Program-made: the position numbers and the translations under genes
In this document: one piece after another, positions 53 through 48,789 of the stretch
Layout of the letters: each line of letters opens with the position of its first letter
Numbering within the stretch: position 1 is the stretch's first letter
Notes under the pieces: model-generated
Databases searched by the model: none
Told to the model about the DNA's origin: nothing
Seen by the model: only the letters and a program-made list of their open reading frames with translations
Source: Magallana gigas
Lineage: Eukaryota
NCBI RefSeq assembly: GCF_963853765.1
Contig: NC_088858.1
Span: forward strand, 2,170,001 to 2,234,000
Reading direction: 5' to 3'
DNA: 64,000 nucleotides

Positions 53-1431
53 AGGCATTGAACAAATCTTACGAACAGATTTGAGCCAAGAAAATGTTAC
101 GATACAATACAGCTCTGATGTGATCAATACAACAGTGGGTACAAAAGTAGCGCAGGTGCAGTTTTTAGCCTTAACACCTGGTCTTCGACAAATATGCCTG
201 AATGCGACAGATCGGTATTTAAAAATAATTAGTTGAATTTTGATCTACTGTGAGTATTAAGTTTTGTAAGCCGTCTATAGTTTGATTATTCAAGATAATC
301 GAAATGAAAGATTTGTTTATATTTCTAGTTTTGACTGGACAGTAAGATGCCTTTCTGTGACAGTTGAAAAACAAGGTACATTTAATGAAAATGCTCCAAA
401 TTAAAGGTTATGCATTAAAATGAATAAAATTTGATTGAAAAACACAAAGTTAATGTTCATCAATCAACAATATTATGCATATTTGCATAATTAACAAGCA
501 AGTGTTTTATTCATATATGCATGATTCTCTCAGTATGTATGTTTTAGCAGGATGTTGGTAGAATAGCATAACTGCGGGTTGGGTTATTGTTATTGAAATA
601 CCTTTACAACTTTGATAAAAAGTTTTGTTATGGTTAGTATTTTCTTACTCGAAAAACAGTAATAATATAAAGTTCTTACAACTCATATGGTGATCGTACT
701 GTAAATCTCAATCAATAACACTCTTATAGGCAAACTGAATAAAAAATCTTATGATAAAACGTATATTTATTGTTTTTTGAGACGAGAACTAAGTAACGTG
801 TAGAAATTCAAACACCGACACAAAAAGTCAACAATGAGGTGGATAGTTTGTTCAACCTTTTCCTTTCACTACTTCCTCTACCTTATTATGTTTGATGCGC
901 TGAATTTCGAAAATATCATACTAGAAAGTTCATTGAATGAAGGGAAAAACCAATCAAATATATTCAATGTATCTGTTAACTAATTCTTCTTTCTTTCTCG
1001 AATAATTATTTATGGTTAAGGTTATATATAGAATCAAATATAAAAGGGATTAACATTTATTTACGTAAAAGTAACTTGATTTTATACAAACAATGTATTT
1101 TTGATACGGGATATTCGAAATAATTCATTGATATTTCAAATTTACAATCTTGATTTATACTGACATTTGGAAATCTATGATATTACACTTTGAATGTACA
1201 ATGAAGCGCATTGAAGTGGTAAAAATGTTCGTTTGAATGGAATATTCTAAACTGTGTATCGAACGTCAATTGTTACATAAGACACACCCATCTCTTTTGA
1301 AACGAGGAAAACAGTATTCGTAACAATGCTTTCGGAACCGCCCCTCTTCTAAACAACACAAGCAGGAATTTCACACACGGACATTATACACAAAAACAAA
1401 AACACAAACTTTCTTTCATTCTTTCTTTCAT

Positions 1432-1475
<44 letters not shown>

Positions 1476-3536
1476 TCCAACTATGTTCAGAAACAGTGAT
1501 ATTGTTCAAAGTAAGAATATTTTTAGTAACAAATTTGTGTTCTGAACTTCCTGTTACATGTACTGTATTGCAAATAAAGAAAAGGTTTTTTTACAGCATA
1601 TATACACGTTTCAGTTTTTTCGTTTTAGAGCGGTAAGCTACGTTCTTCGATCTTCTGCATTTGTTGCTATGTTCGCAGCTTGTTGAGGGGTCTGGGATAT
1701 GCGCGGGGCATGGAAAACATATACGGAGAAAATATTGGGATTCAGTTTGTGTCCACATTTCGGTCCGCAGCCCTGCTAGTGTTGTTTAGAAGATGAGCGG
1801 TTCCGAAAGCATTGTTTCGAATACTGTTTTCATCGTTTTAAAAGAAATGGGCGTGTCTTATGTAACAATTGACGTTCGATACAAAGTTTAGAATATTCCA
1901 TTCAAACGAACATTTTTACCACTTCAATGCGCTTCATTGTATCATTCGTCTGAAATCAGTTTTATATCGTGTATTAGGATTGAAATAGACCATTCTCAAA
2001 AATGGATATCAGGTAATACATTTTACCCCAGTATGCTAATGAATTTATTGTCATAGATCCATGTGAATTCAAACCGTGTCAGAACAATGGTGTATGTACA
2101 TCTTATAAAGATCGATCTGGTTTTACATGCTCTTGCTCTCAAAGACACGAAGGTACATTATGTGAAAAAGGTAGGTTTGAGTCTTTCGTACGAAATCTTT
2201 GCAACCAAAAGTAATGAGGATTTTGGCACGTTTTTTTTATTTTGATCAATCAAAATATTCACATTAACTTAAGTTTTTCCCAATGAAAAGAAATTAATAA
2301 GATCATAATTTTCCTTTTGACCCTCATATATACTTGACAAATTTATTATTTATTTTAATGAATAAGAATAGCTTATATATTTTTATGATAAACATTTATT
2401 AAAGGGTCTAAAGTTACAGAATACGCCTATTTTTAGTTAAATAATTTGCTGTGTATGTTATTAAACTTACGCCAACTCAAGATTTACACCCCTTTACAGT
2501 TATAAAGTTTTGCCATCAAAAGCCTTGTGTTGGTACCAATAACTGCATAGACGTGTCACCGCCACCATATTTCTTTTGCATGCCATGTCCATCAGGAAAG
2601 ACAGGAATAAGATGTGATGTCGGTAAACAAAACTAATTTTCACCTCTGGAACATTTAATCACTTACAATACATTCACCTAGAGAGAAAATGTGTGAAATT
2701 ATGAAATAGAAATTTTATTGATACTTGTTACCCTTTTCTGTACATCTCATAAAACAAAAACAGATACTGATTGTTGTTACTTTTTCTATCTCAGTAGTTG
2801 CTAATCAAACCTGACAATTTCAAACGAAAGATTGTATAGGCTTATTATGTTGACACCTAATTTTGCTGATTCCAGACATTGATCTTTGTAATCCAACCCC
2901 TTGCAATGGGAATGATATATGTCAACAAGAAAACAGTACTTTCCAATGTCAGTCAGGTAATTTTGTTATATAAATACAAAAAGACACTATGTATAATATG
3001 TATGAAAAGTTAACAATTCGTCATTATATGAATTTCAACACATATTATGATGATAATCTTTTCCTTACAGGACACTTTCAGCGTAAGTTTTCCTTTAACT
3101 TATGATTTTACTTTTTAAATTGAAGTAATGTTTGATAATTTTTTTTACCCTTTTTCTTTTTTATCTTTTTGGAGTCTCCTAACGATGAATAATACATATA
3201 CATGTATGCTGAATATTGAAGTATAATCACTAAATATGTTTTTTCCCGCATATCCTATTTATTTACACGGGTTTATTTATGCAGACGTATAAATTAACAG
3301 ATTAAATGGGCATGGTCATATTTTTGATAAAAGTTTATTTTTGTATTTTTATTGTTTACAATGCATTAATATTATATGGATCAACAATAATATGGGGTTC
3401 AGATGTAGAATTAAAAGCAAGATACATTTAATAGATGTGAGTTTCATTTAAAGATACCTAAATTAGCAAATATACAAAATGTGATCCATTTTCGTCATGA
3501 TAACATGAGCAAGTCTACAAACACATACATGGACAT

Positions 3537-3604
<68 letters not shown>

Positions 3605-6600
3605 CCTACACTGTCGCATAAATTTTGTTTAATATACTTTTATCTCTAATTTGAATAGAGCAATGCCCTAACACATGTGTGAATAGCGAAAAAATAGTCT
3701 GTGTGGGAAACCAGTGCATTTGTGCTTTGAAGATGAACAAGAATGAAACATGCATGTCATGTAAGTTTCATAGCTTTTAAATTTCAATTTTCTCAATCTA
3801 TGTTAATCATTTATTGTCTTGCATGTGTCATCGTCGTAATATAAGCTTCTTCTGATGCATCAGGACTTATTATTTCAAACTTGACTCACAGCATTATCGG
3901 AACTTACGTGTTACTAATAGAAAGCCTGTAGATTCCGAGAGTAGAAACAAGTCATTCTTATGCAAAAACTAAAGAGCTAAAGGGGTCGTTTTAAAGAATT
4001 CATCCTTTTAAAAATAAAAATATATTTCTTAAATTATAATCAAAAATAGGATTAAAAAACTCTTTGGAACCATTGTACCAGATATACGAGCATCAAGAAA
4101 GGTGTTGTTTAGACAGTGAAAAGGGCATCAGGAAGTTAAACGTGGCAATATGTAGGGACTATTTCAAAATATCTTTTAGGATTGATTTAGCTACACGGTG
4201 AAATTCAATTTGGAGTTTGACATTTGAAGCACCCTGTCGTAGGGAAAATACACAAATCAGTCCAATTATAAAACTACAGGATCATAATGATACATGGCAG
4301 TCGAAAAGATATATAAATTAAAATTAAAAAAAAAATTTACTTGCGAGCATTATGACTGCTTGACGTATTTTTGTTTACATTTTCGTTTGGTTTTATTAAA
4401 TTATACATAATTTTTTAATTGAGTGTTTTATATTTTTAAAAGATCAAACAAACAGGTTGAATACTAGTAGCAGTAACGTAAGTATAATTTGTTTTTTTTT
4501 TATTACTCGGTATTTTTGAATGGTGTTGGAACTAATCAAATAATTATTGAAAGTTATGAATTATGAGCAATTTATTTCAACAAATAGGGAAACATGCAGA
4601 TTTTTTTTTGCGAATGATATATAAGAGGGTAGCCAAAATATAATTTAATTATAACTGAACGCACAATTTGTTAAGAAAAATATTGAATTTAAACAAAGAT
4701 ATGTAAAGCAAGAGATTTAGTAAGCTACGCTACATATACTAGCGTTCTTCTCGTTTACATGGATAAATGAAATATAATCTCAAAATGCCTTTATACTAAA
4801 ATGAATTTGAAATGATAAATGCAATAAATGTACTAGAAATGAGGTACATGTACACTTTATGAAAGTGTAATAAAACAGAAATATTCGCAACGACAAGGCT
4901 CTATTGAAATTTGCGAATATTTCGCGCACGCAAATAAAAGTTGAAATACTAATAAGGTTCTGGAAACTGTTTTTTTTAAGGTAAAAAACCCCTTACAAAT
5001 GTACTCAAGAGGATAAGCTTGTTATATTATGATAAAAGATAAAATACTTTTAAAGTCTAATCAATAAATGAACTTAAATTAAAAAATATGATTTCTTAAT
5101 TATTACTAGTAGTTTAAGAAAGCTTAAAATATTCCTTTTCGTATTTTATATTTCAGAATCAGTAATATTTTTTTTAATTTTTATCAATAGAATCCGCAAT
5201 TTGTTTCACCATCTTTTGGGTCAGTTATAACGTGCGATACGTACGAGAGTAAATGTCTGTTTCCAGTCTATATATACTCAGAGTAAGTTATTAAATTATT
5301 GGAGTACTTTTGTCTAATTAAATCTCTTAGTAAAATACATTTTGGAAGATTCAATTTAATGGTTTTAAAGATATAAATAATTATGGTATTGTGTTGGATA
5401 AATCCACTGTGGTATTTACCTGGTTTTAATATTTGGTAGACTTATTATACTTTTTTCATCTACAGATCTACCCCAAAATTGTCTCTTTTCAAAGAAACGA
5501 ATAATTCTATCTTATCTGGTGGAAAAATCAGTATTTTGCCTCCAGAAAACAGCATGGATGGTTTTTATAGAACGACAACTTTGCTTACCAAATATATGCC
5601 CGTTGATTCAACGTATCATGAATTTGATATTTGTCTTAACGTTGCAAAAGTCTCATCGTAAGTATTTGTTTTTGCTTTCCAAGGAATGTTTCTGCACTTC
5701 GAGTAATTCATGCAAAGTAATTATCAAACCGTGAATTTATATGATGATCCTTAAGCGGAAAACTTATGGATTACATTTTATCGAGGTGCGATTTGTAAAA
5801 ATAGGAATGTGTTTTTTAAATGCAAGGTGATGATCGAGTGGATATTGTTTCATACACACCAAATTCTAGAATTTTTAAAATGTTTATTTCCTTTCAACAG
5901 CAATACTTATTTACAAATGCCAGACACCCTGGGCATTAAGACAGCTAGCAACATCATATGATTATGCAATAACACAACAAATATATGTGACTACAGATTT
6001 GTCAAAAGTTTTACTGTATCTTTAGGCAGTCGGGTGTTTTTTTTTGTTTTCAAAAAGAAATAACATTCAAGTCCCTATATTACATGTAAGGGTTTTTTTT
6101 AGAAGAATTTTTAAAAATTTGTTCAAATAATGCCACAGACTTTTGACATTATCACTATTTAAATTAGATGTGTTATGTCTTTATTTTTGCAGATGTCACA
6201 ATTGTCACATTTTCAATTTCCCCACATAAAACTTTGTTGTGCAAGTTTTAGCAAAAGCTATATTTACCTTTTTAACGCTGTTTTTTGTGCCATGTTTTAA
6301 CTGATTACCACGGTTATTTTATTATGAATAAAATGAATATTTTCATACGCATATTTATAAACGATTCACATAAGTGTATATCTGCCTGTGACTGCAGGAA
6401 AACTTACCAAGAGAAATATAATGGAGGAAAAGGAATGACAGCAAGTTTGTTTACAAATTATATAATAAAAATATTTCTTCAAAATTTTCGTAAAGAAAGA
6501 ATAAATATTATCAATAAACATATATAGCCTGCAATTTTAATCATAAATGATCAGAGAATTAATACTCAGTACATCTTGTCGGTTTAAATATGGATTTATC

Positions 6601-9600
6601 ATCGTTGATAGTGAAGCCATGAGTGTCCATTAAATGCGCTGTTTGCTCTACATTTCTTTGGCATTCTAATTCTGTTTTGCTTATTAAAAGCGAATCGTCT
6701 ATCTAGGCCACATTAGCATGTCCGTGTTTTCTAAAAGAAGCGAACACGGGTTTTAACAGTTTCGTGAATATTTGTGGAGCTGATGCCAATCCCATGGCCA
6801 AACATGTGTATTGGAGCTACTTGCCTTTCCAATAAAATCTCAAATATTTTCTGTCATCCTGACACACATTGTACGAATAATAAGCGTTGTGGTGAATTCG
6901 GAACTTATGTGTCCGGTTTGGTTTGTTTTTTATTGAGTTCATCCGGTGTTTACATGTGCTCGAGGCACTTTTGCCCAACTCATTTTTGATGTACATTTAC
7001 GCACTACGGAGTAAGTATTTTGTTTAGCATTGTACAAAACATTTAATTACACCCAGATAACCAATTTGCTTTAATGTAATTCTGCTTTCATCCCTTTAGA
7101 TGTCAGTTCATCTTCGCTAGGTTTATCAAAACATGTGTAAGGCATAATGTAAAACATGGAAATTTAGGAACATTGTTAATTACATGCTATTTAGTCACAC
7201 TAGCAGAATGTTACAGTTAATATCCTATATGTTCTTACAGGTTTTAACTGTTATTATCAATCTGAGTTGTGTATAAGCCCTAAACCTTTCCACGATAACA
7301 TTTTCTTTATTTGGCACAGTGTGAAAAATATATTGGACTTGACATGGTACAATTTTCTGTAATTTGTATTTGTACTTTTGCAGTTTTTACCCTCACTGGA
7401 GGAGCAATAAACACTTAACTCAAGTAGAAGTTTTAGTTGTTTAACGGCACAGTAAAAATCCGTAAACCGGTAAGATTGGTCATCAAGATGAGTCTGCGGT
7501 CGGAACCAACCAGGAGAAGCACACGTATGAGGAACCTGACAACACCAGCACAGGAAACTTACGAAGCTCGAGTGGACACCTTTCAAAGAAGGCTAAACAG
7601 TATTAAGAGTGAGTGGAGGGAGTGTTTTGAAGAAATAGAGAGATCAAGCAGGGATATTAAAACTCTGAAATCTATTGACGATCTTCTTGTGAAAGGCTTC
7701 GAAACGTATCAAAAAACATCCAATGCATTTTGTGATTTCTTGAGAACTGTACGCACAGAACAGAGCGCTAATGAACTTGCATCTCATCTCCTAATTAAAG
7801 AGACTTTGTTAGGAAAAATCAACGTAGGAAGAAGCAAAATTGAATATTTGATTTCAGAGGGATCATTCAAATCGCTGACTCAGCGATCACTTTCATCTGG
7901 CTACAGTAAATCTTCAAGCCGATCCATAGGATCTATACTGTTAAGGAAAGAAGCAAAACTAAAAGCCCAGCGCACAATGTTGAAACATTTAGATGAGGAA
8001 CTAGTGCTCGAGGCTCAACTAAAACGTCTGAAGGCCCAGCGAGAAATGAAGATGGTAGAGAGCGAGCTTAGTGTTCTTAAAGAGGACCCACGTTTACAAG
8101 AGCTTGCGCCGAGTCTCTCGAGTGAGTCAAAAACTGAAGAATACTTGAAGCTTCTCCCAAGGTACGAGCAGGATCGCAAGCAGCATGAAAATGCCATAGA
8201 GACATCCCAGTCCAACAGCTTTAGTGATTGGAGACAAAAGGAGGATGCAGTTGTATCAACACCGAAACAGTCTTCCACTTCCCCTCCTATAGCAACTGCT
8301 TATGTCCAAGAAGAGACACCACAATTACACACACTGAGGCCGTTCGACGACACACCTAAGACTCAGCTGAACCCCGAAGTACAACCCTTCACTCCGAGAC
8401 AGACGGAAGTAACTCAGCAGAGTCAGATGATCATGATAGACACATTTACTAAGCATTTAGTAAAAAAGGACATCATCATGTCAAGGCTGTCAAAATTTGA
8501 CGACGATCCGATAATGTACGTCTCATGGAAAAAGGGATTTATTAACATTATGGAAGAACTCGGAGCTTCGGAAACAGAAAGACTAGAATTATTATGTGAA
8601 AAACTCGGACCTGAGTCTTCAAGACAAGCTAGAACTATAAGAGCCTGCAATGCAGACAGTCCAAACATCGCAATTAAGAAAATCTGGGAGGGACTGGAGA
8701 GACGCTTTGGAGCGGCGGAACAGATCGAGAACTACATCCTGAAGAAAAAATTAAAGAATTCCCAGAGATTTCGTCGGATCACTTTCATCTGCTCCACGAC
8801 CTGGCAGACCTAGCATCCGAGATTGCATCATTAAAGGCACAACCTCAGTTTGAAGTCTTATTCAGCTACTTTGACTCAAAGAAAGGTGTTAACGAACTTG
8901 TGCAAAAACTTCCATGGAATCTGAAGGACAAGTGGACTTCAGAAGCAACAAAACAGAAGCAAAGTATGGGAGTGGCATATCCACCCTTTTCAGTCTTCGT
9001 TAAGTTTCTGGAAAACATGGCAGAAATGAAGAATGACCCTGCATTCCAGTATGAGAAGAAAGGGGGCAAGAAACAACAAACTTTTTCGACTCAGCAACCG
9101 AAACAGTTTAGTAGGAATGCAGTGAACAGGACTTTACCATTAACCAGAGTAGCTGCTAGAAAGACCGAGACAATCACAACTTTGGAAGTGACGGACATGT
9201 GTCCACTACACAAGAACAGTTCACATTCCCTTAACGACTGTATGTCCTTCCGCCAAAAGGCAATAGGAGATCGTAAGAAAATGATCCTAACTAATGGAAT
9301 ATGTTTTAAGTGTTGCAGTGGCAAGAAACATAGGGCTAAGAACTGTAAAGCAGATGTGAAATGCAGTGTGTGTCAAACATCGTTACATCCGACGGCTCTT
9401 CATGAAGAACCATCTGAGGCACAAGATTCTGGACGATATGCGGTGAAGAACAGAGAGGGGAACCCTTATGAAGGAGAGAACAGACCCATTGTCTCTTCAG
9501 CCTGTACAAAGGTACATGGAGCAAGTAAATCTTGTGCAAAGATAGTACCTGTTCGAATAAGTATTATTTCCAATCCACGGAAGTCGATGCTGGTTTATGC

Positions 9601-37179: not shown

Positions 37180-40100
37180 GAAAATGTTATTAACTGAAAT
37201 ATTAAATTATTAAATATCAGTGAATTCATTAAAAGTGTGTTTTTACTTTTTATTCAATTAAAACAAAAAGAATGCAACTAAAAATGTTACTTTTTGCATA
37301 ACGGATTTAATGTTATCATATTGGTATTTGATCTAATTAAGGACACATTTTGAAACTAATTTTAAATAAGTTATTTTGCTTATATTTTATTATTTGATTC
37401 ATTTTTTTGTTCAAAATTTTGATAACCTTATTTAAGAAAGAACAAATGGATGGCCTTTTTGACACTTGCCTTTACTTAAATATGACACAAAATCGTTCCC
37501 CAGAAAAGGGTTCCTGCGCTGGGGGTTTGTGTTACAATGGTGGACATTGTGATGGTCATACGTCAACAAAGAACTGTTTGTGTCCTCTTGGATTTTCCGG
37601 TGAAAATTGCACAACTGGTGAATATATCAATTTTCTGTTAACATTTATTAAAGATACATCATGCGCAATAATTATTCAAATTATTAAAAATGCGTAAAAT
37701 AATGTTTTCGTATGTACTTCTAGATCATGGCATTCCACAAACAGTCAATCAACATGCTATAAATAACGCAAGTTTTTTTTGTTTTTTCCTTCGCTCGTTT
37801 TTACAGCTATTTTTAGGTCACCTTAGTAAACTCAGGTGACCTATTGCTATCCGTTTTCGTCCGCAGTCGTGCGTCAACAATTTAACATTATTGATTCTTA
37901 AAAACTACAAGGCTAATTTTTGGTGTGAGGCATCTCTATGGTAAGAAGAATCTAAATTGTGAAATTCGTTGCTCTACCACCCCCGGTGCACCACAGGTGG
38001 GGCCAAATATGCAAAAAAAAGCCAAATTTTCAAAAATTTCTAGTCTCCTCCCACAAATGTGAGAAAAAAACTGGTTGCATGGTTATGATATCCATGAAGC
38101 CCTCTACCATAATTGTGATATCCATGGCCCCTGAGGCAGGGGTTCTGGCTCTAGAGTGTGGCCAATATGGCCATATAGTAAAAATGTATTAAATCTGAGA
38201 AAATCTTCTTCTCTACTCCCATATATATTTTTTTGAAAATAAATGTATGATTATGATGTCAGTTAAGCCCTCTACCAAGATTGTGAAATTCAAGACCACT
38301 GTGTCAGGGATTCAGGCTATAGGGTGGAGCCAATATGGCCATATAGTAAAAATCTTCTTCTTTACTCCCAAACATGTGGGCAAAAAACTGAATACATGGT
38401 TATGGTGTCCACTAACTCCTCTACCTAAATTGTGATATCCATGGGGTTGAGTATCAGGGGTTCAGGAAATGGGGGGGGGGGATACGGGAATATAGTGATA
38501 ATGAATATAATGTTTGGGTTTTCACTCTAGGTCAGGGCCAAAATGGATGTATAGGTGTTGATGCAGATAATGTTTAAAAATCATCTTCTTTACTTCCACA
38601 CAGCTGAAAGAAAAACTGAATTCATGATTGTGTAGACCAGATCTTTAGGTTTTTCGCCAAAATTGTAAGTTTCATAGTCCTTTTTGAAAGATTTCAGGCA
38701 GGGAGGTGGTCGTCATTACAAATTTATAATTTTTCTACTCCAGAATAAACCCAATTCAATGAATATATGACACTCCTCGACAAGTTTGTATATGGGTTAT
38801 ATGCTACTCAGGTGACCGTCAAGGCCTTTTGCCCTCTTGTATTGATATGTAAATGATAAACCTCTTCAGCGTGATTTTCTTTTTAATATTTAGTTGTCGT
38901 TTTCAATTATTTTCCCAAAAAATATAAAAAAAATATTATGTAAATTTCATTAAGATAAAGAATTTTACTTTTTTTTGGTCAAGCTTTGACAAGATATCAA
39001 CTGTTTTTAATATCAGAAAAATAGAAAAAAAAATGCCGAAAAAAATATTGCTTACATAACCATATTATCTTTCCAAAAATCACTCAGGACATTCTGAAAA
39101 TAAAATGATTATTTTTGTGCAATACAGCCATTGTTTGGAAACATGCTAGTGCCAAAACAAGTCATTTGTCCGCTGAAAGAAAAGTGCAATATTCAGTTTT
39201 TATTGTCATCAAGAAAAGTGTGAGTTTTTTAATTTTGTTATATTGTGTATGTTTATGTAACATAACGTATACCAATTCATTTCGATGTAATGTAGATCGA
39301 ACCTTTTGAGTATGATTTGTAATCTAAAGTTACAACACCGATGATATCTAATGATGGTATTTTTTCTATGACATTTTTCAAGAAAGCAGTTGTGTTTTAC
39401 AGGTTCAATATTGATATTAAAATTGACTCTTCAAGTATCGAAATAAAGGAAAAGGAGGAAGAAAGAGTATCAAAGGACTTCCTTGTCACGTTGACAATAG
39501 TTCATAAACACACTGGCTCCGATCAGCTGTGTTTGAATTTAACCTCCGGAAATCATAGGTAATTTTCAAAATGTATACATGAGAGTAATCTAAATGCTTT
39601 GCCCTCTCCAACACCATATTATCAATAAAACATTTTTTTTAAACACACTTTTAACTATTATGTAAAATCTTGATCTTCTGTAGAGAAAAGTCCTTAATGG
39701 TTTAGAGAATAATGATGCTTTGAAAATATCTTTACACTCTGCTTTTTATTGTTGAAATAAACAATGACAACAACAAAAACAACCAGCATTTTTAAAAAGA
39801 TTTAAAAATTAAGCAGAAGAGACATTTAATAAAGTAGACAATAAAATTGGTGAATCACAAAATCAAAGATGATATGGACATCTAATGTATGTTTTTGTTC
39901 ATTCTAGCTTGGTAGCAGACAGGTTTTGCTGTGATATTTTCACCGAAGAAACAGGTTAGATTTTCTTTACATGTTGCGACGCTATTATTGCAGAAACCTT
40001 AAGGAATCTATTGATATCAATTTCATATTATTAGTGACTTCCAATGGCGACGCATGCGTGAGTGACAGTGTTGATGATTGCAAAAACCCTTCTGCTCTGA

Positions 40101-43100
40101 AATTTATATGCTCAGATCCGACAACAGCGGAATATTGTCGTAAATCCTGCAAACTATGCGGTAATTGATTAAAACCAATAATATAAGATGTATTGTGGTT
40201 CTTATCTTATTCTTATTTATTCATTTTCATAAAAAATATATCTCAAATCTTTGTCTGTTATAGATAAACAAACAAAGGAAGAGACAGAACAGGTAGTCGA
40301 TCAATGTGTTCCTGTATATCATGGCATTTTTGTGCCGATAGAACTCAATTTTTTCTTCCATAGAATAAAAACATCAAAATGTTGTACATTGTTTAGAATA
40401 TCACCTTGTAATAAAAACAATAATTTATGTACCAATGGCATTAAACTTCTTTATTAAATATAAGTGTGAAAGATCTAAATGCAATTATCCCGTTGTTACG
40501 TTATATTATAAAAAATTATATATGTTTTTTTATACAACTAGACTTATTATGTTCCTTTTTCCTCTAGCTTTTTATTCCCCCGTCACCAACAAACACATCA
40601 GCATACTCATGTTCTCCGGGCTTGGAGTGTCACATGATGCTCTACCTAAAACGAGGCTACAATAATCTCTGGTAATAAAAGCTGATTACCTATTTTATAA
40701 TTAGTTCAATATATTTCCTAATTCAGATTATACGTGTATATTTTGTTTGTTAGCATAAAATGCTTTTTTTGAAAAATCGTGTTTTAATTTTTTTTTCATT
40801 ATCATTCAAACTGCTAGACGTTTTAAAAGACTTCTTCAAATAAAATAAAAATGTGTTTGAATACAATCTTAAGTAGGCTGCTTTTCAACATGCATTATTT
40901 GTCACTATACAAATTGTCCATAGTGTGTTAACGTTGCTCGGCACACCAATGAATTTTTTAATGGGTCGATAAAGAATCATTTTTCTGAAAATGATATTAC
41001 AAAATGACATCAATATCTGCTTTCTATTATTTTATATAGATTTTTTGGTATTTTTTTTTTTACAGAAACAGGTTGCAAACAGGATATTATAAAGCTAAAA
41101 ATTTGTTAAGGAATACATAACAAAGACGGATATATAAACTTTATAATACTTTGTTAAAAAAATAATTATAAAGGTGAAAATCAAGAACTGTAGATATTTT
41201 TAAATCTATGGACAAAACTGCAAATAAACTGTTACTCATATTAAACAAATGTTGTATAATAATATTCAAACAAGAAATTAAAACGAAAAAGTGAAAATAA
41301 AGAAAAATTGGAATATCTTAAAATCAAATAATCACGATTGAAATTAAACTAATCCCGAACGAAATTATATAAAAGTTAGAATGTATCACGTTTACATAAA
41401 TGTCAGGGTGTTTAGGTCTAAAATGGTTTAGTCATTTACCGACATTATAATTCATACAAATTACTCAGAATAAACTGCAGTATTTTTGTAAAATTTAAAT
41501 TTAAAATAATTCTGATTGAGACCAGTTTCTTTTTAATCGGGATCGTTTTAAATTTGATGAACAATATTCTTTCTTAAATTTCGCATTTTTTGTGTAAAGG
41601 ACTATGTGCGGTATGGTCAAATAGCTGTCCCTGATACGCCTGGATGCCTATAACTTTAATCTTGATTTTAGTCATCATTGCTCATTCGGTATTTAATTAT
41701 GACGTCACCTAAATGACCTAATTCCCACAAATTTGCAAACAAATGAAAATATTCTCATTTTTGTTCTATATTTTGCATTCGGGAGTACAGAGCGCAGATC
41801 TGCTCAAGTGCGATTTGAACATATGTTTTTCTTCAGATAGGTATACAAATTAAACTAAAACGTGGTACTTGAGCAAGCCTGCGCTCGATGTTTCCCAGTC
41901 GATAAACCATTGGAAAACACACATATTTTGCTTCAAAACATCAAATTATCAAAATAATGCAATTTTCATGATGTCATTTCTACATTATGACGTCACTGTG
42001 GTGATAACCTTTTACACATTTATTTCCAATATGATTTTAACTATCTTTCACCTTATTTTAATAGCTCTTTCTAAAACTTTGATTTTGAGGCAAAAAATTT
42101 ATAAAACCGCACATAGTCTTTTCTTAGTAGAATACAATATGTTATTCTTCAAATTTTATCCATATATTTAAAAGAAACAATGAATAAAAATTTTGATTTT
42201 CAGAAGATTTAATAATCAAATATTTGACCAAAAGATCTGTGGTTTGTATGAATTCATAATTATATAACACATTAATTGACACCAAGTTTTAGGCTCTAAA
42301 ATGTCCTGCTTGTCCATAAAAGGGCATGGTCACGATTTTGGTAAAAAATTATCTTTCCAATTTTAATGTTTACAATGCTTCAGTAGGGCATTTTCAACAG
42401 GCAACCAAAATTTGAGTGTCATTCGTTCAGTTATAAGCGAGTTACTAAACTTGCAATTCTTTGTTTTGTAAACAAAGCTTTTGTTTATATTTTGAATGTT
42501 GAAGTGAAAATTCCTTTTTTAGACCTAAAATGAATGAGTAGAACGTTATGAACTGTTTATCTATACTTTTAAATGAATAAGAAGAATAGAAAAATCAGCT
42601 TAAAAAAGCTTTTTACTGGTATATTTAACCTTTGTAAACAAAAACAGGACACGAGCCTTGTTTACATGACAAAGATTTGTGAGCCCTTTATCTTGCTTAT
42701 AACTCTACGACTGACATTCAAATTTCATTTGATCATTAGAAATACATTTCTAAATCATTGTAAATAATAAAAACAGAAAAATGGAATTTGACCAAAATCA
42801 TGACCATGCTTAGATTGATCTCTGTTTTATGGAATCATCTTTTAAAACAAGATTCTGCATCGATTCATCAAATAAAGTTTGGTGTGTCGAGAAACCTTAA
42901 AGGAAAACACGAATTCTAGGTCTAATTAAGAGGGCTAAATGGTTGTGGCCATTCACAGACTGTATTGATCTCTTTTAAAAGAAGCTCTCTATATAATAAA
43001 TAGGAAATTTACTAAATAATTTATAGCTAAAAAAAAACCCCATATCTTACAATTTTAGGTCGATCTGTTGGTTATTTGTCAATATTTGAGCCCCCTTCGA

Positions 43101-45038
43101 CCAAGCAGGGAAAAAGTACTTTTTTGCTCACATATCGTTCAGACAACAATATCGATAGAAATATTAGAAAGCTTTAAATAAAAAGGTACAAAGGTCAGAA
43201 AATCAAATCCAAGTTTTTCAGGACCTTGGAACAATTGTTGGCATTTCGGGTTACCTCTTTTTTTTTATCAAATACGAAGGCCCGTACATAGCAAAATAAG
43301 GAAAATTAATAGAATACTGTATACAGGGATATCATCGCCCCCGTTTAATTTTCGCCCCATTCGGCCTCGTTTTCAGTGGGCGAGTTTAAGACTTGGTGAA
43401 TTCCAATTTCCAAATCACAACTTTGGCTGGGTGAATTCAAGACAGGACGAAACCGTCTACAAGTGAAAAAGTAGGAAATAACATGAGGTAAAAATAAACC
43501 ATGTATACAATATTTCATACCCGAGGATATAATAAGAAGTGTCATAATTATATCACTGCTAAGTCAGTGTTACTTCATTGTTAGAGATAGTTAATCAAAC
43601 ATTTCAGGTGATGGCGAAACCTACGTTAACGTCGGTATTTACTTGATTGAGCATCAACATGCACGATGAAAACTAAACTTGGCCACCTTAAATGCGTTAT
43701 CATATTCAACACTCACTTGTCTGCTTCTTTTTTACTCCAGCCCCGAGGTTTCCGTTATTCCCTCCGTCGGCGCCTCTGTTCACGTCTTCAACAATTCCGA
43801 CTGCAATGTATGTTCCGTGGATGTACTGATTAAATTATCCCTGTCTCATCCTGGCCAGAGGCTGCAACAGTGTCTACAGGCGACTGACTACGACTTTGGG
43901 TAAACATTTAAGGAAAAAGGAATCATGTTTTGAGTATTACGAGGTACTCAAATACGGTCAAGAATGATCAAATCCCGGAAAGCTCTTTGATAGATTTGAT
44001 AATGTCCGGCCGTATTTGATCACCTCATTATATTCAAATAATAATTCCTTATTACTTTCATAAATTATAGCAATTGTACGAATAAATATTAAACTAGTCA
44101 GTGATGGAGTGGATTGGAATATACGTTAACGTTACGTTACAAAACTGTAGCCCTTTTCACAAAAAATCTTAAGGTTTTGCGTAAGATTTTAACTTAAGAA
44201 TATCTTACGAGAAATCTTAAGTGCTTTTCACGAACGCATTCGTAACAGATTTCACTTAAGAATTTACTTACGAGTTATTCTTTCCCTAGCAACGATTTGA
44301 ATTCACTTAATAATTCTTATAGAACAGGAGAAACATATAAATAAACCAACATTCTCTACAAAAGGATGCAAAACTGAAATTATATACCACTAACATCGAG
44401 TGAAATCAATGTGATGTAGTAGAAATCAAAATATGACGTCACAATCACAATGTGTGTTTAGTGTGACGTAGGAAAGTATTAGAACAAAAATTTGAGGTAA
44501 AATTTTTTGTTGAATTTATTTGTGTATTTTTTCAACTATTACTGCTATATAATGCGAAATAACGGCATAATGCGGCTCAGAACATCATATTTAGCTGTTT
44601 TTCTTGTTTATTTTACATAACAAGATTATTATTTACAGTTTTGAAATACTTACGAGAGGGTATGTGCTATCGTAAAGTTACGACAAATTTTACACGTAAG
44701 AATCTCATAAGATGTTTTGTGAAAATGAACAAAAACTTAAGTTTTCACTTACGATAAGAATCAATCGTAAGATTTTTTGTGAAAAGGGCTACTGATTCGT
44801 AGTGTTATTACAGACAAAGACACTAAAAATCGTAACAAATATAGACAGAACTTTAAGATCACACATTCATGTAAATAATGGACATTATCAATCATTTAAG
44901 CTAAAATCTTGTTTTTAAAAACCACAAGTGGATATTCATTACCGGACTACATGACTTTGTATGTATGTATTTTTAATCAACTTCAAATAAACAGGTCCAT
45001 GGAGAGACGATGTTACTTTTTGGAAAACGTTCAGCACA
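53..45038 (+). CDS. Large secreted/extracellular mosaic protein, 5'-partial: 11 copies of an unnamed Cys-containing ~100-aa domain (X; possibly Ig/cadherin-like fold) + 9 EGF-like exons + ShK domain; 3' end not resolved
   Basis: Hand-traced exons with AG acceptors and GT donors (one GC donor) and matching phases: 53-214, 329-375, 2057-2170, 2500-2622, 2876-2956, 3071-3082, 3659-3760, 4443-4477, 5191-5282, 5466-5657, 17863-17921, 18004-18014, 18291-18415, 18663-18794, 18877-18929, 19064-19171, 23673-23710, 23810-23907, 23991-24152, 24275-24324, 24411-24433, 24792-24907, 25000-25152, 26411-26463, 26599-26712, 28206-28237, 28364-28473, 28560-28712, <=32133-32170 (acceptor in N gap), 32273-32355, 32456-32556, 32829-32987, 33339-33385, 33490-33603, 33738-33869, 33976-34095, 34403-34440, 34719-34816, 34985-35146, 35340-35389, 35471-35493, 35611-35726, 36508-36651, 36919-36977, 37504-37617, 37724-37767, 39128-39219, 39403-39558, 39908-39954, 40035-40160, 40264-40292, 40568-40671, 43741-43899, 44995-45038. 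Sum 4949 nt, open throughout. No transcript evidence is available. Confidence 0.8.
1199..1939. mobile_element. MITE with 161-bp TIRs and probable TA TSD
   Basis: 1199-1359 is the imperfect reverse complement of 1779-1939; TA on both flanks (1197-1198, 1940-1941); internal (TTTC)n tract. Confidence 0.8.
1409..1477. repeat. (TTTC)n microsatellite
   Basis: Direct inspection. Confidence 0.95.
2057..2956 (+). CDS. EGF-like exon cluster 1 of the mosaic gene (two full EGF exons + one truncated 4-Cys EGF exon)
   Basis: Phase 1-1 exons: DPCEFKPCQNNGVCTSYKDRSGFTCSCSQRHEGTLCEK (2057-2170); VIKFCHQKPCVGTNNCIDVSPPPYFFCMPCPSGKTGIRCDV (2500-2622); DIDLCNPTPCNGNDICQQENSTFQCQS (2876-2956). Confidence 0.9.
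3539..3602. repeat. (CA)n microsatellite
   Basis: Direct inspection. Confidence 0.95.
3659..3760 (+). CDS. Cys-rich (6 Cys, EB/EGF-like) exon of the mosaic gene
   Basis: Phase 1-1, 102 bp: QCPNTCVNSEKIVCVGNQCICALKMNKNETCMS; donor GTAAGT at 3761. Confidence 0.75.
6535..6887 (-). mobile_element. DIRS/Ngaro-like remnant, continuation of RT on the far side of the BEL insertion
   Basis: Minus strand reads DAYYSYNVCQDDRKYLRFYWKGK*LQYTCLAMGLASAPQIFTKLLKPV...A*IDDSLLI...GFTINDDKS; it joins in frame with the 14534 segment across the TSD. Confidence 0.85.
6888..7451 (+). repeat. 5' LTR of the BEL/Pao element (564 bp)
   Basis: Starts TGTGGTGAATTC, ends ACGGCACA; AATAAA at 7406; differs from the 3' LTR by 5 substitutions and one 6-bp indel (manual comparison). 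Confidence 0.97.
7488..13788 (+). pseudogene. BEL/Pao gag-pol polyprotein broken by frameshifts, stops and an internal duplication
   Basis: DUF1759-like SKFDDDPIMYVSWKKGF; three Cys/His knuckles (CPLHKNSSHSLNDC, CFKCCSGKKHRAKNC, CSVCQTSLHPTALH); protease AIIDDQSNRSL; RT FYVDD; RNase H HIFSDAS; integrase GVDAFGP/SDRGTNF/GGAWERLIG; C-terminal WKLVQKLADDFW. Frameshifts near 8750 and 10200; stops at 12151, 12679 and 13168. Confidence 0.93.
10924..11521 (+). repeat. Tandem duplication of 299 bp within the BEL RT/RNase H region
   Basis: 10924-11222 repeated at 11223-11521 with 3 substitutions; 299 is not a multiple of 3, so it causes a frameshift. Confidence 0.92.
13976..14533 (+). repeat. 3' LTR of the BEL/Pao element (558 bp)
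   Basis: Direct repeat of 6888-7451, preceded by the polypurine tract and followed by TSD AGCGT. Confidence 0.97.
14534..16220 (-). mobile_element. DIRS/Ngaro-like tyrosine-recombinase retrotransposon remnant, 5' part (ORF1 + start of RT)
   Basis: Minus-strand decayed ORF1 from about 15965 (MSEYTEHSEMAAG...; downstream QRRREFII...PVTDKLFG) and RT N-terminus (FISNIFVRPKK...RVILNLKHLN...ETLSSAINLVSKNCNFASIDLQDA). Confidence 0.85.
19064..19171 (+). CDS. EGF-like exon of the mosaic gene
   Basis: QCISNPCLNNGDCQTESSGKSRCDCPYGFWGIYCEK, 108 bp, phase 1-1. Confidence 0.9.
19331..19439 (+). pseudogene. Decayed EGF pseudo-exon inside the mosaic gene
   Basis: Retains acceptor (ttaattacag) and donor (gtaatg); 109 bp. 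Remnant reading GF*NNHSY..NKAVCFTNNKTFGCL*..GFTG.TCSC has stops and indels and resembles the EGF exon at 33976. Confidence 0.6.
19760..22366. mobile_element. Non-autonomous foldback-like DNA transposon, 2607 bp, 6-bp TSD
   Basis: Termini TGTTGCAACC...GGTTGCAACA; TSD CACCAT at 19754-19759 and 22367-22372; imperfect modular TIRs of about 90 bp; interior rich in the palindrome CCACTATTGAAATAAATTATTTCAATAGTGG; no convincing ORF. Confidence 0.8.
25190..25776. mobile_element. MITE-like element with 11-bp subterminal repeats (CTTAAAGGTGG type)
   Basis: Left end TCCTTAAAGATCGCTTAAAGATGCTTAAAGG, right end CCACCTTTAAGCCACCTTTAAGGA; several units in both orientations at 25605-25770; no TSD found. Confidence 0.6.
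26599..26712 (+). CDS. EGF-like exon of the mosaic gene
   Basis: VKGSCTGRVCYNGGFCDGSLSVPRCRCRSGFSGEDCSL, 114 bp, phase 1-1; paralogous to 37504-37617. Confidence 0.9.
   Translation, partial: LKDHALEEFVTMADFVTEVCLFLDVGVDLDSLAKIAL
29378..29414 (-). ncRNA. Mirror copy of the candidate hammerhead ribozyme
   Basis: Exact reverse complement of 31854-31890 within the inverted arm. Confidence 0.55.
30461..31626 (+). CDS. Penelope-like RT C-terminal half + GIY-YIG endonuclease (5'-truncated)
   Basis: ORF track 30577..31626 extends upstream in frame to the inversion junction; YLDD catalytic motif and GIY-YIG-type YIG motif. Confidence 0.85.
31854..31890 (+). ncRNA. Candidate minimal type I hammerhead ribozyme in the Penelope 3' region
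   Basis: AAACTC-CTGATGA-tttaaaat-GAAA-CTAG-T-T-GAGTTT: perfect 6-bp helix I, conserved core, palindromic CTAG helix III; helix II weak; cleavage triplet GUU. Confidence 0.6.
31915..31957. repeat. (TA)n microsatellite at the Penelope 3' end
   Basis: Direct inspection. Confidence 0.9.
31978..32132. other. Assembly gap
   Basis: Run of N; it hides the acceptor of the exon ending at 32170. Confidence 1.
32565..32652. repeat. (TC)n microsatellite
   Basis: Direct inspection. Confidence 0.95.
33490..34095 (+). CDS. EGF-like exon cluster (three exons) of the mosaic gene
   Basis: NPCESSPCQHKGQCLALNAKTEFACSCRYGYTGKICET; IETRPCSFSDTCFGGSTCVPVRSEPFFRCICPSGKTGVRCDVDD; GYREHCDNSSICGNNAACHSVNQTMLCVCRLGYKGPTCSI; all phase 1-1. 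Confidence 0.9.
35742..36390. mobile_element. Helentron/HINE-type non-autonomous element with internal ~165-bp tandem repeats
   Basis: T-rich start, TGTC(C/T) microsatellite (ctgtccgtctgtctgtccg), 3-4 copies of an AAATTTTCGTCAA..GATTTCTCAGCAAC unit, 3' palindrome region ending in ttgtt. Confidence 0.75.
37128..37175. repeat. (GA)n microsatellite
   Basis: Direct inspection. Confidence 0.95.
37504..37617 (+). CDS. EGF-like exon of the mosaic gene
   Basis: KKGSCAGGLCYNGGHCDGHTSTKNCLCPLGFSGENCTT, 114 bp, phase 1-1. Confidence 0.9.
37810..38840. mobile_element. Helentron/HINE-type element carrying satellite-like repeats (resembles oyster Cg170-bearing elements)
   Basis: Start TTTTTAGGTCACCT...CTCAGGTGACCTATTGCTAT...CGTCCG; repeated AATCTTCTTC..TACTCCC units; end CTCAGGTGACCGTCAAGGCC..GCCCTCTTGT. 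The family name is from recall. Confidence 0.8.
40035..40160 (+). CDS. ShK (ShKT) domain exon of the mosaic gene
   Basis: VTSNGDACVSDSVDDCKNPSALKFICSDPTTAEYCRKSCKLC: six Cys with the ShK C-terminal CxxxCxxC signature; 126 bp, phase 1-1. Confidence 0.85.
42321..42810. mobile_element. MITE with TIR GGGCATGGTCACGATTTTGGT (Kolobok-like, common in oysters)
   Basis: Left AGGGCATGGTCACGATTTTGGTAAAA, right TTTGACCAAAATCATGACCATGCT; a related 5' fragment lies near 3305-3480. Confidence 0.75.
43315..43512. mobile_element. Short MITE with TACTGTATACAGGG-type TIRs
   Basis: Left TACTGTATACAGGG, right CCATGTATACAATA; two internal GGTGAATTC-type repeats. Confidence 0.65.
43917..44050. mobile_element. Short inverted-repeat (hairpin) element
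   Basis: About 43-bp imperfect inverted arms AAGGAATCATGTTTTGAGTATTACGAGGTACTCAAATACGG; related to the element at 51628. Confidence 0.55.
44145..44794. mobile_element. MITE, 650 bp, TIR C(T/A)GTAGCCCTTTTCACAAAAAATCTTA
   Basis: About 27-bp TIR with one mismatch; subterminal CTTACG/CGTAAG repeats. Confidence 0.8.
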
Positions 45039-46311
45039 GTGAGTTATGAACAAAATTGTTTTATATAAGTTACGTTATTGTCGTAGACGGATAGAGCTAT
45101 TTCGGATTTAAAATTAACAAATTTAGGTAGGTCCCTACTCAGGATTTTTGTGGTTAAAGTAAGGTTTTTTTTTCATTAATCAAGTAGAATAATACCTTAC
45201 GTTATAAAAAAGCCCCAAAAATACATGCCTTAACTATTTACTTTGATCACTAGAGACTCCAGTGGATGCATACCCCCTTCTTCGATCACATGATTTCAAC
45301 CAAAATCATTATTTGGCTCATATTAAAAAAATATCAAAGCAAAACAAAGATTCAAATGTTTTAATTAATCATAAATAATGAAACAAAGTCATAACAGGTG
45401 TGATTATCATTATTTGATTGATTAAATTTTTTACCATTTTTTAAACTTTCAAATATTAGATTTATGTCTACTGCAACTAAAAAGCAAAAAAAAATATAGG
45501 ACTTCACATGCTTCTTTTTTTCTACGACCTTTAGAACACATATACCCCCTTATCAAATGCAGCTAAAAAAGTGTCACGAACACAATTTAAAAATACATCA
45601 GAAAACAGCATTTTATTTCATTGCTTTGATAAACCCTAAAATTCTTCTTTCAAAACTACATGTATTGAGTACAAATAAATTTTTTGGATAAACAGTACCT
45701 TTCCTCTGCATAGATAAACACAAACGTACTAAAATCTCAGTACAAAAATTCACGATTTCCAACTATTGGACTCAATAAGATCAAAACATTTATATACTTG
45801 TAGACATTATTTACACTTGACTGCTTCTATCAAATTCAGAATTATCAATTAAACATTAAAAATAAGGGGAAAAAGGGTAAATCCGAACAAATATCGTTTT
45901 CGATTTTAAAGCTTATTATATCTGCTACATTGATGACGCGTCTGAGTAGGGATCCACCTTAAATTAATCAAAATAAAAAAAACAACTAAATTATAGTGTA
46001 ATCTAAAATTGTCACAAAATGTAATTTCTTTAAACAGCTTCCCCCTAAATGACCATAACAATGCGGCATTAGTTCACGGAAGACTAACCACAACGAACGC
46101 ATCTCTTGAAAGCTGTGTTTCTATGTAATCGGACAACTGTATATCTTCTTTTGAATGTGTAAAATGTAGTTGTACATAGATATACATATCTTTTGTCTTA
46201 ATTACAAATTACTACTGATAAATTATGAATATAATTAATTTTTAGAAGCACTAATTCTGATGAATACTGTATATATATTTTATTTTCAAAACAAGATACA
46301 TGTGAATTAAT

Positions 46312-48763: not shown

Positions 48764-48789
48764 TATGCAATTAAAACCGTGAGGTCTGG

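What the first reader, a model, noticed from the sequence alone, without database searches (positions are those of the whole stretch)
53..45038. Giant exon-shuffled extracellular protein built on an unnamed three-exon domain that behaves as a class 1-1 module
Seen: 11 copies of domain X, each split the same way: a phase 0-2 exon (PxFxxP....C....CxF/I), a phase 2-2 exon (ending G....C...), and a phase 2-1 exon (mostly RC(F/Y)xV, e.g. DRRCYTV, GESRCFQM, DKRCFHV). Each complete copy is preceded by a short phase 1-0 linker exon, so linker+X is symmetrical 1-1 like the interspersed EGF and ShK exons. Established: class 1-1 modules are the main substrate of metazoan exon shuffling. Inference: X is a mobile metazoan module, perhaps an Ig/cadherin-like beta-sandwich, that automatic annotation would miss by calling the gene Notch-like or uncharacterised. 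An EGF+ShK+X mosaic of over 1650 aa suggests a mucus, shell-matrix, adhesive or immune protein.
Basis: partly seen in the sequence, partly recalled or inferred. Interest (0 to 1): 0.7.

Follow-up and report, generated by a model that had tools for sequence, protein, structure and literature searches.

The report
Oyster Ig-like/EGF mosaic protein gene

Summary
On the + strand, 53-46048 holds 54 coding exons of one gene that begins upstream of the window. They encode 11 copies of a ~100-aa domain X, 10 EGF-like exons and 1 ShK-like exon. Every X is split into exons of phase 0-2, 2-2 and 2-1. All 10 complete copies follow a short 1-0 linker exon, so linker+X is a 1-1 unit.

RNA joints confirm 17 of these exons. 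A transcript-derived protein (P0057, 2094 aa) is colinear with all 54 at 93-97% identity, including across the N gap. About four codons are unaccounted for there; I did not fill them.

No Pfam model matches X, in 15 full-length relatives or in 67 isolated units. An AlphaFold model (pLDDT 89.8) is an Ig-like beta-sandwich, nearest I-set Ig and cadherin domains at about 10% identity. Every named homologue is molluscan and is annotated uncharacterized, Notch-like or mucin-like. A sea slug homologue keeps the same exon phases.

"Mobile metazoan module" is not supported: X occurs in one mollusc family that shares an N-terminal head. Function (secreted adhesion or matrix glycoprotein) is inferred only. 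I rate it a new member of a known kind, of moderate interest.

The parts
53..375 (+). X1, partial: exon B 53-214 and exon C 329-375. Its exon A lies upstream of the window.
   Evidence: Phase and splice scan. Matches P0057 residues 441-509.
2057..2170 (+). EGF-like exon, phase 1-1, 114 nt
   Evidence: Pfam EGF E=2.7e-5. P0057 511-547.
2500..2622 (+). EGF-like exon, phase 1-1, 123 nt
2876..2956 (+). Short EGF-like exon, 81 nt. About 5 residues of P0057 (616-620) between this exon and the next could not be placed.
3659..3760 (+). Cys-rich EGF-like exon, phase 1-1, 102 nt
4443..4477 (+). Linker exon, phase 1-0, 35 nt
   Evidence: Located with P0057 residues 654-665. AG/GT borders.
5191..17921 (+). 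X2: A 5191-5282, B 5466-5657, C 17863-17921. The 12-kb B-C intron holds a BEL/Pao LTR retrotransposon.
   Evidence: Peptidase_A17 hit.
18004..18014 (+). 11-nt micro-exon serving as the 1-0 linker
   Evidence: Placed from P0057 780-783, with AG/GT borders.
18291..18929 (+). X3: A 18291-18415, B 18663-18794, C 18877-18929
19064..19171 (+). EGF-like exon, 108 nt
23673..23710 (+). Linker exon, phase 1-0, 38 nt
23810..24324 (+). X4: A 23810-23907, B 23991-24152, C 24275-24324
24411..24433 (+). Linker exon, phase 1-0, 23 nt
24792..26463 (+). X5: A 24792-24907, B 25000-25152, C 26411-26463
26599..26712 (+). EGF-like exon, 114 nt
28206..28237 (+). Linker exon, phase 1-0, 32 nt
28364..32170 (+). X6: A 28364-28473, B 28560-28712, C ending at 32170. 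The 5' end and acceptor of exon C lie inside the N gap. The B-C intron also holds an inverted Penelope-like element.
   Evidence: RNA joint 32170>32273.
31978..32132 (.). Assembly gap. It hides about the first 9-10 nt of exon C of X6. It was not filled.
   Evidence: P0057 is colinear on both sides with 4 residues unaccounted for.
32273..32355 (+). Linker exon, phase 1-0, 83 nt, Thr/Pro-rich
   Evidence: RNA joints..
32456..33385 (+). X7: A 32456-32556, B 32829-32987, C 33339-33385
   Evidence: RNA contigs and joints..
33490..34095 (+). Three EGF-like exons: 33490-33603, 33738-33869, 33976-34095
   Evidence: RNA joints..
34403..34440 (+). Linker exon, phase 1-0, 38 nt
   Evidence: RNA joints.
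34719..35389 (+). X8: A 34719-34816, B 34985-35146, C 35340-35389
   Evidence: RNA joints..
35471..35493 (+). Linker exon, phase 1-0, 23 nt
   Evidence: RNA joints.
35611..36977 (+). X9: A 35611-35726, B 36508-36651, C 36919-36977
   Evidence: RNA joints..
37504..37617 (+). EGF-like exon, 114 nt
   Evidence: RNA joints.
37724..37767 (+). Linker exon, phase 1-0, 44 nt, with a GC donor
   Evidence: The loose end of an RNA contig at 37767 matches 39128.
39128..39954 (+). X10: A 39128-39219, B 39403-39558, C 39908-39954
40035..40160 (+). ShK-like exon, phase 1-1, 126 nt, six Cys
   Evidence: Pfam ShK E=0.0018, 19.2 bits against a cut-off of 20.9. P0057 1939-1979 is 100% identical.
40264..40292 (+). 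Linker exon, phase 1-0, 29 nt
40568..45038 (+). X11: A 40568-40671, B 43741-43899, C 44995-45038
46038..46048 (+). Last coding exon: 2 nt, two codons and a TAA stop
   Evidence: The only AG-preceded site in 45040-57700 that reproduces the C-terminus of P0057.

Best explanation
Shown: window 53-46048 (+ strand) is the 3' four-fifths of one expressed oyster gene. Its protein has at least 2094 aa. The ~440-aa head is encoded upstream of the window; the remaining 1654 aa are encoded here.

The window part is a chain of 11 X domains, 10 EGF-like modules and 1 ShK-like module. It ends in a stop three residues after X11, with no membrane anchor or mucin stalk.

X is a ~100-aa all-beta domain with four invariant cysteines; some copies carry an extra pair. 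It is predicted with high confidence to be an Ig-like (I-set/cadherin-like) sandwich. It has no Pfam model and was found only in molluscs.

In the model, exon A covers the first three strands and exon B the next four. Exon C covers only the last strand, so both introns fall in loops. With its 1-0 linker exon, each X is a 1-1 unit, like the EGF and ShK exons. Any block of units can therefore be duplicated or inserted without breaking the frame.

The gene carries one old internal block duplication: X1/EGFs/X4/X5/EGF/X6 corresponds to X7/EGFs/X8/X9/EGF/X11, at 32-43% identity. A second paralogous gene starts at 57740.

Inferred, not shown: the product is a secreted, disulfide-locked, N-glycosylated rod of beta-sandwich and EGF modules. 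It would act in extracellular adhesion or matrix/surface coating, as Ig/cadherin/EGF mosaics do elsewhere. The likely disulfide pairing is strand B to F plus A' to G.
For: - Exon phases and borders.
- RNA joints with GT..AG ends across 32170-37767; stranded reads indicate a + strand RNA.
- P0057, from a 6719-nt intronless contig, matches all 54 exons in order, with one split-codon residue between neighbours. Identity is 162/175, 646/669 and 779/801.
- Stop exon.
- No Pfam hit on X. No sequence match to solved structures.
- AF2 model: pLDDT 89.8, pTM 0.82, eight strands.
- Foldseek against PDB: titin, neuroplastin and Siglec-like Ig domains at TM ~0.6. VIA-align: Z 9.0-9.7 to titin, Dscam and cadherin domains. 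AFDB and Atlas: TM 0.7-0.74, including mollusc EGF proteins.
- Four invariant Cys in 67 units.
- Mollusc-only naming.
- The Elysia gene shows the same 1-0 / 0-2 / 2-2 / 2-1 / 1-1 phases.
- Signal peptide in the C. virginica relative and in the window's second gene.
- 37 N-x-S/T sequons and 131 Cys in P0057.
Against: - No tissue, localisation or binding data, so the function rests on analogy.
- The structure model is of a homologous unit (P0008:4-116), not of a window copy. Disulfide pairing was not read from coordinates.
- P0057 is 5'-truncated and comes from another individual (93-97% identity), so a close paralogue cannot be fully excluded.
- Two small stretches of P0057 (616-620 and 1290-1293) have no placed exon; the second lies in the gap.
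- The C. virginica relative P0046 ends in a Ser/Thr-rich stalk, a transmembrane helix and a short tail. Isoforms of the window gene with other 3' exons are therefore possible.
- 'Mollusc-only' rests on a 34-position exon-A profile and a word-seeded search. Both would miss very divergent relatives.
Confidence: 0.85

Rival explanations
1. X is only a very divergent member of a family that is already named (I-set Ig, HYR, He_PIG/dystroglycan-type cadherin-like, FN3). In that case 'unnamed domain' reflects the sensitivity of the search, not a real absence.
For: The fold matches I-set Ig and cadherin domains. The protein-language-model search lists He_PIG and cadherin-like clusters at score 0.83-0.85, which is lead level only. 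The weak top PDB sequence hit is an Ig light chain at E=0.52.
Against: No Pfam family recurs among 67 units even at E<=1; the most frequent is hit by 2 members. hhalign of the X profile against a HYR domain gives probability 1%. Sequence identity to every structural match is 7-16%. The Z scores form a flat plateau, as expected for a common fold.
Confidence: 0.2
2. X is a pan-metazoan mobile module that moved between unrelated genes by exon shuffling.
For: The linker+X unit is symmetric 1-1, and this is conserved between a bivalve and a gastropod. AFDB clusters with TM ~0.7 include fish, echinoderm and rotifer proteins. A ShK exon appears to have been inserted in this gene.
Against: All named sequence hits are molluscan. 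The larger members share one N-terminal head, so they are one gene family. Non-mollusc hits to the mosaic cover only EGF repeats, at 7-18% coverage. The fish and echinoderm matches are fold-level only, at 13-16% identity.
Confidence: 0.1
3. The main product is a membrane-tethered mucin-like protein, as in C. virginica. On this view the stop after X11 marks a minor or truncated isoform.
For: P0046 ends in Ser/Thr-rich tandem repeats, a transmembrane helix and a short tail. The window has 11 kb, including a second N gap, between 46048 and the next gene.
Against: P0057 stands for 11 member sequences and ends exactly where a unique AG-preceded exon gives the same three residues and TAA. tblastn of the P0046 tail finds nothing in 45-57 kb.
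Confidence: 0.12
4. The exons belong to several short independent genes.
For: None was found. Some database gene models of relatives are fragmented.
Against: RNA contigs join exons across X6 to X10. One intronless transcript-derived ORF covers all 54 exons.
Confidence: 0.02

Closest known systems
I-set immunoglobulin domains (titin, Dscam, neuroplastin, NCAM)
   Same: About 100-aa, 7-8-strand beta-sandwich. These are the best structural matches: VIA-align Z 9-9.7, rmsd 2.4-2.9 over ~90 residues, Foldseek TM ~0.6. Both are used in tandem arrays in extracellular or filament proteins.
   Different: Only 7-13% identity and no Pfam I-set/Ig hit. X has four invariant Cys, two of them only 6 residues apart in the first hairpin, rather than the single B-F pair. 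X is encoded by three exons plus a linker, not by one 1-1 exon.
Cadherin EC and dystroglycan-type cadherin-like / He_PIG domains
   Same: Similar fold scores: Z 9.1-9.2 to desmoglein, cadherin-23 and protocadherin-15. Language-model neighbours include He_PIG clusters.
   Different: No Pfam Cadherin or He_PIG match in any unit. No inter-domain Ca-binding motifs were seen in X. The atlas scores are below the level that counts as evidence.
HYR (hyalin repeat, PF02494)
   Same: An extracellular Ig-like module that sits beside EGF and Sushi repeats. From my own recollection, its last strand carries a similar C-x-F/Y-x-V motif; this was not checked here.
   Different: hhalign of the X profile against a HYR domain gives probability 1% over 7 columns. 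There is no Pfam HYR hit on X.
Notch / Delta / fibropellin / crumbs-type EGF mosaics and membrane mucins
   Same: They share phase 1-1 EGF exons and a long modular secreted or type I architecture. These are the names automatic annotation gives to relatives. The C. virginica paralogue has a mucin-like stalk and a transmembrane helix.
   Different: EGF repeats are a minority of this protein. No LNR, DSL, laminin-G or SEA domains were found. The window gene has only a 27-aa Thr/Pro-rich linker and no transmembrane segment.

Membership tests
Ig-like beta-sandwich fold (structural class) | Two-sheet sandwich of 7-9 strands with Greek-key topology, superposable on solved Ig/cadherin domains | tested here: met
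   AF2 model with pLDDT 89.8 and eight strands. Z 9-9.7 and TM 0.6-0.74 to Ig and cadherin domains. This rests on a prediction, not an experiment.
Pfam I-set / Ig / V-set families | Sequence match to the family HMM above the gathering score | tested here: not met
   No Ig-family hit in 15 full-length proteins or in 67 single units, even at E<=1.
HYR (PF02494) | Profile similarity over the ~80-aa repeat | tested here: not met
   hhalign probability 1% against P0074:130-222. No Pfam hit.
He_PIG / cadherin-like (PF05345, PF00028) | Match to the family HMM | tested here: not met
   Absent from the Pfam lists. Only language-model neighbours at 0.83-0.85.
EGF-like domain (PF00008) | Six-Cys EGF pattern with an HMM match; phase 1-1 exon | tested here: met
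   Pfam E=2.7e-5, 24.8 bits against 21.5, for 2047-2170. Three stretches in P0057. All ten exons are phase 1-1. Two of them (2876-2956 and 3659-3760) are atypical.
ShK / ShKT domain (PF01549) | Six Cys ending C-x3-C-x2-C; HMM match above the gathering score | tested here: inconclusive
   The Cys pattern is present in 40035-40160. Pfam E=0.0018, but 19.2 bits is below the 20.9 cut-off.
Class 1-1 symmetric exon module (Patthy's exon-shuffling class) | The unit is flanked by phase-1 introns on both sides | tested here: met
   Linker (1-0) + A (0-2) + B (2-2) + C (2-1) in 10 of 10 complete copies and in Elysia. Movement between unrelated genes, which the class is invoked to explain, was not observed.
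Mucins | Long Ser/Thr/Pro-rich tandem-repeat region | tested here: not met
   The window gene has only the 27-aa Thr/Pro-rich linker at 32273-32355. A long Ser/Thr-rich repeat is present in the C. virginica relative P0046.

The most novel reading that the evidence does not exclude
X defines a mollusc-specific family of Ig-like recognition or adhesion modules. On this reading, the conserved frame-neutral four-exon cassette has let molluscs expand and vary tandem arrays and tandem gene clusters. Such arrays could form a lineage-specific surface, mucus or immune recognition repertoire, comparable in logic to other invertebrate diversified receptor families.
Probability: 0.2. Interest if true: 0.6.

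Novelty: new member of a known kind. Interest (0 to 1): 0.4.

Why it matters
It gives a clean, RNA-supported definition of a domain that current Pfam does not cover. The domain makes up most of a family of very large mollusc proteins, from protobranch bivalves to sea slugs, that are now mislabelled Notch-like, mucin-like or uncharacterized.

A curated model would correct those names. It would also allow searches of shell-matrix, mucus and haemolymph proteomes.

The phase pattern is conserved between a bivalve and a gastropod. That makes this a tidy example of a multi-exon domain behaving as a 1-1 cassette for intragenic expansion. The fold itself is ordinary and no function is shown, so the gain is in annotation and evolution rather than in mechanism.

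Tried and rejected
- An HMM grown from exon B found only 4 copies, because exon B is too divergent. In leave-one-out tests exon A generalised better, so it was used for the single library search.
- The RC-F/Y motif at 41886 looked like an exon C. It has no usable splice sites and no partner in P0057, so I rejected it.
- My first linker guess, 18225-18244, was wrong. The real linker is the 11-nt micro-exon 18004-18014.
- I looked for a twelfth X between 26712 and 28206, where C. virginica has one. None is present.
- An exon for P0057 residues 616-620 was not found between 2957 and 3658.
- HYR kinship, which I recalled from memory, was tested and rejected.
- A profile search of PDB sequences gave nothing below E=0.5.
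- Literature searches by topic and by gene or protein accession found nothing on this family.
- The exon-A profile hits P0019, P0020, P0022, P0027, P0032 and P0040 match only part of the profile and are unnamed. I treated them as unrelated repeats.

Full report
**What the window is**

The DNA is AT-rich animal sequence (about 30% G+C). Public runs that hold it are labelled oyster or 'organism A'. Two assembly gaps are present, at 31978-32132 and 47326-47476.

Two transposon insertions sit in introns of the gene studied here:
- A BEL/Pao LTR retrotransposon lies at about 6.8-14.5 kb. It has a Peptidase_A17 hit and duplicated LTR-like ends.
- An inverted pair of Penelope-like copies (GIY-YIG hit) lies at about 29.4-31.9 kb and abuts the first gap.

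**Checking the observation**

A self-comparison of all stop-free stretches showed EGF-like pieces and several pairs of related pieces. It also picked out a Cys-poor relative at 62.8 kb.

Every one of those copies starts directly after an AG in phase 0 and ends two bases past a codon before a GT. This recovered exons B and C and the linker exons of each copy.

The finding's limits are exact: 53 is the first base of exon B of X1, and 45038 is the last base of exon C of X11.

**RNA evidence**

Contigs from three RNA runs of different studies, plus raw poly-A reads, were laid on 32133-38132. They gave GT..AG joints for every predicted exon from the end of X6 to the linker before X10. Depth was near zero in most introns; the peaks at 35.7-36.5 and 37.7-38.1 kb are repeats.

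The stranded reads had first mates on the minus strand, which indicates a + strand RNA. One contig's loose end at 37767 matches 39128. This revealed an eleventh exon A that the HMM had missed, and a GC-AG intron.

**A transcript-derived protein covers everything**

A search with the C. virginica relative returned P0057. It is 2094 aa, comes from a 6719-nt contig of a public run, and stands for 11 member sequences. It cannot be genomic, because it is intronless.

Each of my exons matches it in order, with exactly one residue (the split codon) between neighbours. P0057 also corrected two of my linker calls:
- a 35-nt exon at 4443-4477;
- an 11-nt micro-exon at 18004-18014.

It located the stop as well. 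A unique AG-preceded exon at 46038-46048 reproduces the last three residues followed by TAA.

The final model has 54 exons and 4948 coding bases. It has no internal stops. All borders are AG/GT except the gap-hidden acceptor, the GC donor and the stop exon. It aligns to three blocks of P0057:

| P0057 residues | Identical / aligned |
|---|---|
| 441-615 | 162/175 |
| 621-1289 | 646/669 |
| 1294-2094 | 779/801 |

. So the exons do not belong to several short genes.

**The gap**

Exon C of X6 ends at 32170, and its reading frame is open from 32134. Neither of the two AGs after the gap gives the required phase. The exon's acceptor and first few codons must therefore lie in the unread stretch.

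P0057 is colinear and in frame on both sides, with four residues (1290-1293) unaccounted for. An RNA contig in run X10 also carries 1034 nt upstream of 32456. I did not read out or supply the missing letters.

**What X is**

The eleven copies are 98-114 aa long and only 19-43% identical to each other. They share the following pattern:
- P-x-F near the start;
- two Cys six residues apart in exon A;
- G-x4-C at the end of exon B;
- R-C-F/Y-x-V in exon C.

Some copies add a further Cys pair.

A profile of exon A alone was run against 1.84 billion representatives. It found 40 proteins, 17 of them at E<=1e-10 and with up to 15 matched stretches each. A full-length X HMM then matched end to end in those proteins, so the three exons do make one repeated domain there too.

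Pfam finds only EGF-type families in 15 full-length relatives and in P0057. It finds nothing recurrent in 67 isolated X units, even at E<=1. A profile search of PDB sequences gave no significant hit. A direct profile comparison with a HYR domain was negative.

**Predicted structure**

AlphaFold2, run with a 67-sequence alignment, gave a confident model of a homologous unit: pLDDT 89.8, pTM 0.82, eight strands.

| Search | Best matches | Score |
|---|---|---|
| Foldseek, PDB | Siglec-like adhesin, S-layer protein SbsC, neuroplastin, titin, MyBP-C and VEGFR2 Ig domains | TM about 0.6 |
| VIA-align | titin, Dscam and cadherin/protocadherin domains | Z 9.0-9.7 |
| AlphaFold DB and ESM Atlas | unnamed regions of mollusc EGF proteins, among others | TM 0.7-0.74 |

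Sequence identity is 7-16% throughout, and the score list is a plateau. This shows the common Ig-like sandwich, not membership of a particular family.

Mapping the exons on the model shows that both introns fall in loops. Exon A covers the first three strands and exon B the next four. Exon C covers only the last strand, which follows the least confident loop.

**Distribution and relatives**

All hits that carry a name are molluscs:
- oysters (Crassostrea, Magallana, Saccostrea);
- scallops (Pecten, Ylistrum);
- clams and freshwater mussels (Mercenaria, Mactra, Mya, Dreissena, Sinanodonta);
- the protobranch Solemya;
- the gastropods Haliotis and Elysia.

Their names are 'uncharacterized', 'neurogenic locus notch homolog-like', 'delta-like', 'lin-12-like', 'mucin-like' or 'SVEP1-like'. 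Non-mollusc hits to the mosaic region (eyes shut, crumbs) cover only its EGF repeats.

The larger family members also share a ~290-aa N-terminal head. So this is one gene family, not a module scattered among unrelated genes.

In the Elysia marginata locus the annotated exons show the same series: 1-0 linker, 0-2, 2-2, 2-1 and 1-1 EGF. Exon C is the same 47 nt as in the window's X1, X7 and X10. The cassette therefore predates the split between bivalves and gastropods.

**Architecture and likely role**

Within the gene, X1/EGFs/X4/X5/EGF/X6 corresponds to X7/EGFs/X8/X9/EGF/X11. This is an old internal block duplication. X10 is the counterpart of a copy that C. virginica keeps but the first block has lost.

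The ShK-like exon has no Pfam counterpart in the C. virginica or C. gigas relatives. It is the one sign of a foreign 1-1 module being inserted.

The C. virginica relative has a signal peptide, then the head, the X/EGF array, a Ser/Thr-rich repeat stalk, a transmembrane helix and a short tail. The window gene instead stops right after X11. P0057 has 131 Cys and 37 N-glycosylation sequons.

I therefore read the product as a large secreted, disulfide-rich glycoprotein rod. I infer an extracellular adhesion, matrix or surface-coat role by analogy with Ig/cadherin/EGF mosaics. Nothing here tests that.

**Verdict**

It is not supported in calling X a mobile metazoan module.

X is a new sequence family of a very common fold in a lineage-specific protein family. 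It is worth a curated domain model and follow-up expression work, but it would not surprise a specialist.

Noticed in passing
window 57740-63299 (+): A second, paralogous gene of the same family starts here. The ATG at 57740 opens a signal peptide. Head-domain exons lie near 58468-58800, 59570-59710, 61759-61920 and 62046-62237. A first, Cys-poor X-like domain lies at 62859-63299. The region aligns to residues 1-413 of C. virginica P0046 at 50-66% identity and to the head of P0057 at 50-83%, so the locus is a tandem gene cluster.
   Followed up: partly
P0057:1-290 (encoded upstream of the window; the paralogue's copy is at 57.7-62.3 kb): The conserved ~290-aa N-terminal head has no Pfam hit. 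Its model (pLDDT 79) is mainly beta-strand with three short helices. Its best whole-length match is the N-terminal region of Dictyostelium integrin-beta-like Sib proteins (TM 0.55, E 1e-8). It carries an invariant D-x-D-x-D motif that might bind calcium.
   Followed up: partly
window ~6768-14520: A BEL/Pao LTR retrotransposon with long ORFs, a Peptidase_A17 hit and near-identical ends at about 6.8-7.4 and 13.9-14.5 kb. It is inserted in the 12-kb intron between exons B and C of X2. It includes an internal ~300-bp duplication near 10.9-11.5 kb.
   Followed up: partly
window ~29400-31970: Two copies of a Penelope-like element (GIY-YIG domain) lie in inverted orientation. Their translated segments are identical wherever compared. 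They are flanked by (TA)n-type repeats and abut the N gap. This inverted repeat is a plausible cause of the assembly gap.
   Followed up: no
window 18004-18014: An 11-nt micro-exon with AG/GT borders serves as the 1-0 linker before X3. Ordinary gene finders would be likely to miss it.
   Followed up: yes
window 37768: A GC-AG intron follows the linker exon 37724-37767. It is supported by an RNA contig whose continuation matches 39128.
   Followed up: yes
window 33738 / 33741 / 33746: RNA contigs from different runs use three nearby acceptors for the second EGF exon of the triplet. This points to small in-frame or alternative acceptor variation, or to allelic differences.
   Followed up: no
window 2957-3658: Five residues of P0057 (616-620) have no placed exon here. 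The interval contains an (AC)n microsatellite at about 3539-3618 that reads as alternating His/Thr in one frame. A tiny polymorphic exon there is possible but was not shown.
   Followed up: partly
window ~19640-22390: A dense array of degenerate short repeats, on both strands, fills much of the 4.5-kb intron between the EGF exon at 19064 and the linker at 23673. It forms a family of 30 related stretches. G+C is lowest here, at 0.25.
   Followed up: no
window 35730-36530 and 37730-38130: Intronic repeats with very high depth in the RNA contig sets (thousands-fold) and many loose ends. They are probably abundant dispersed repeats that are transcribed elsewhere.
   Followed up: no
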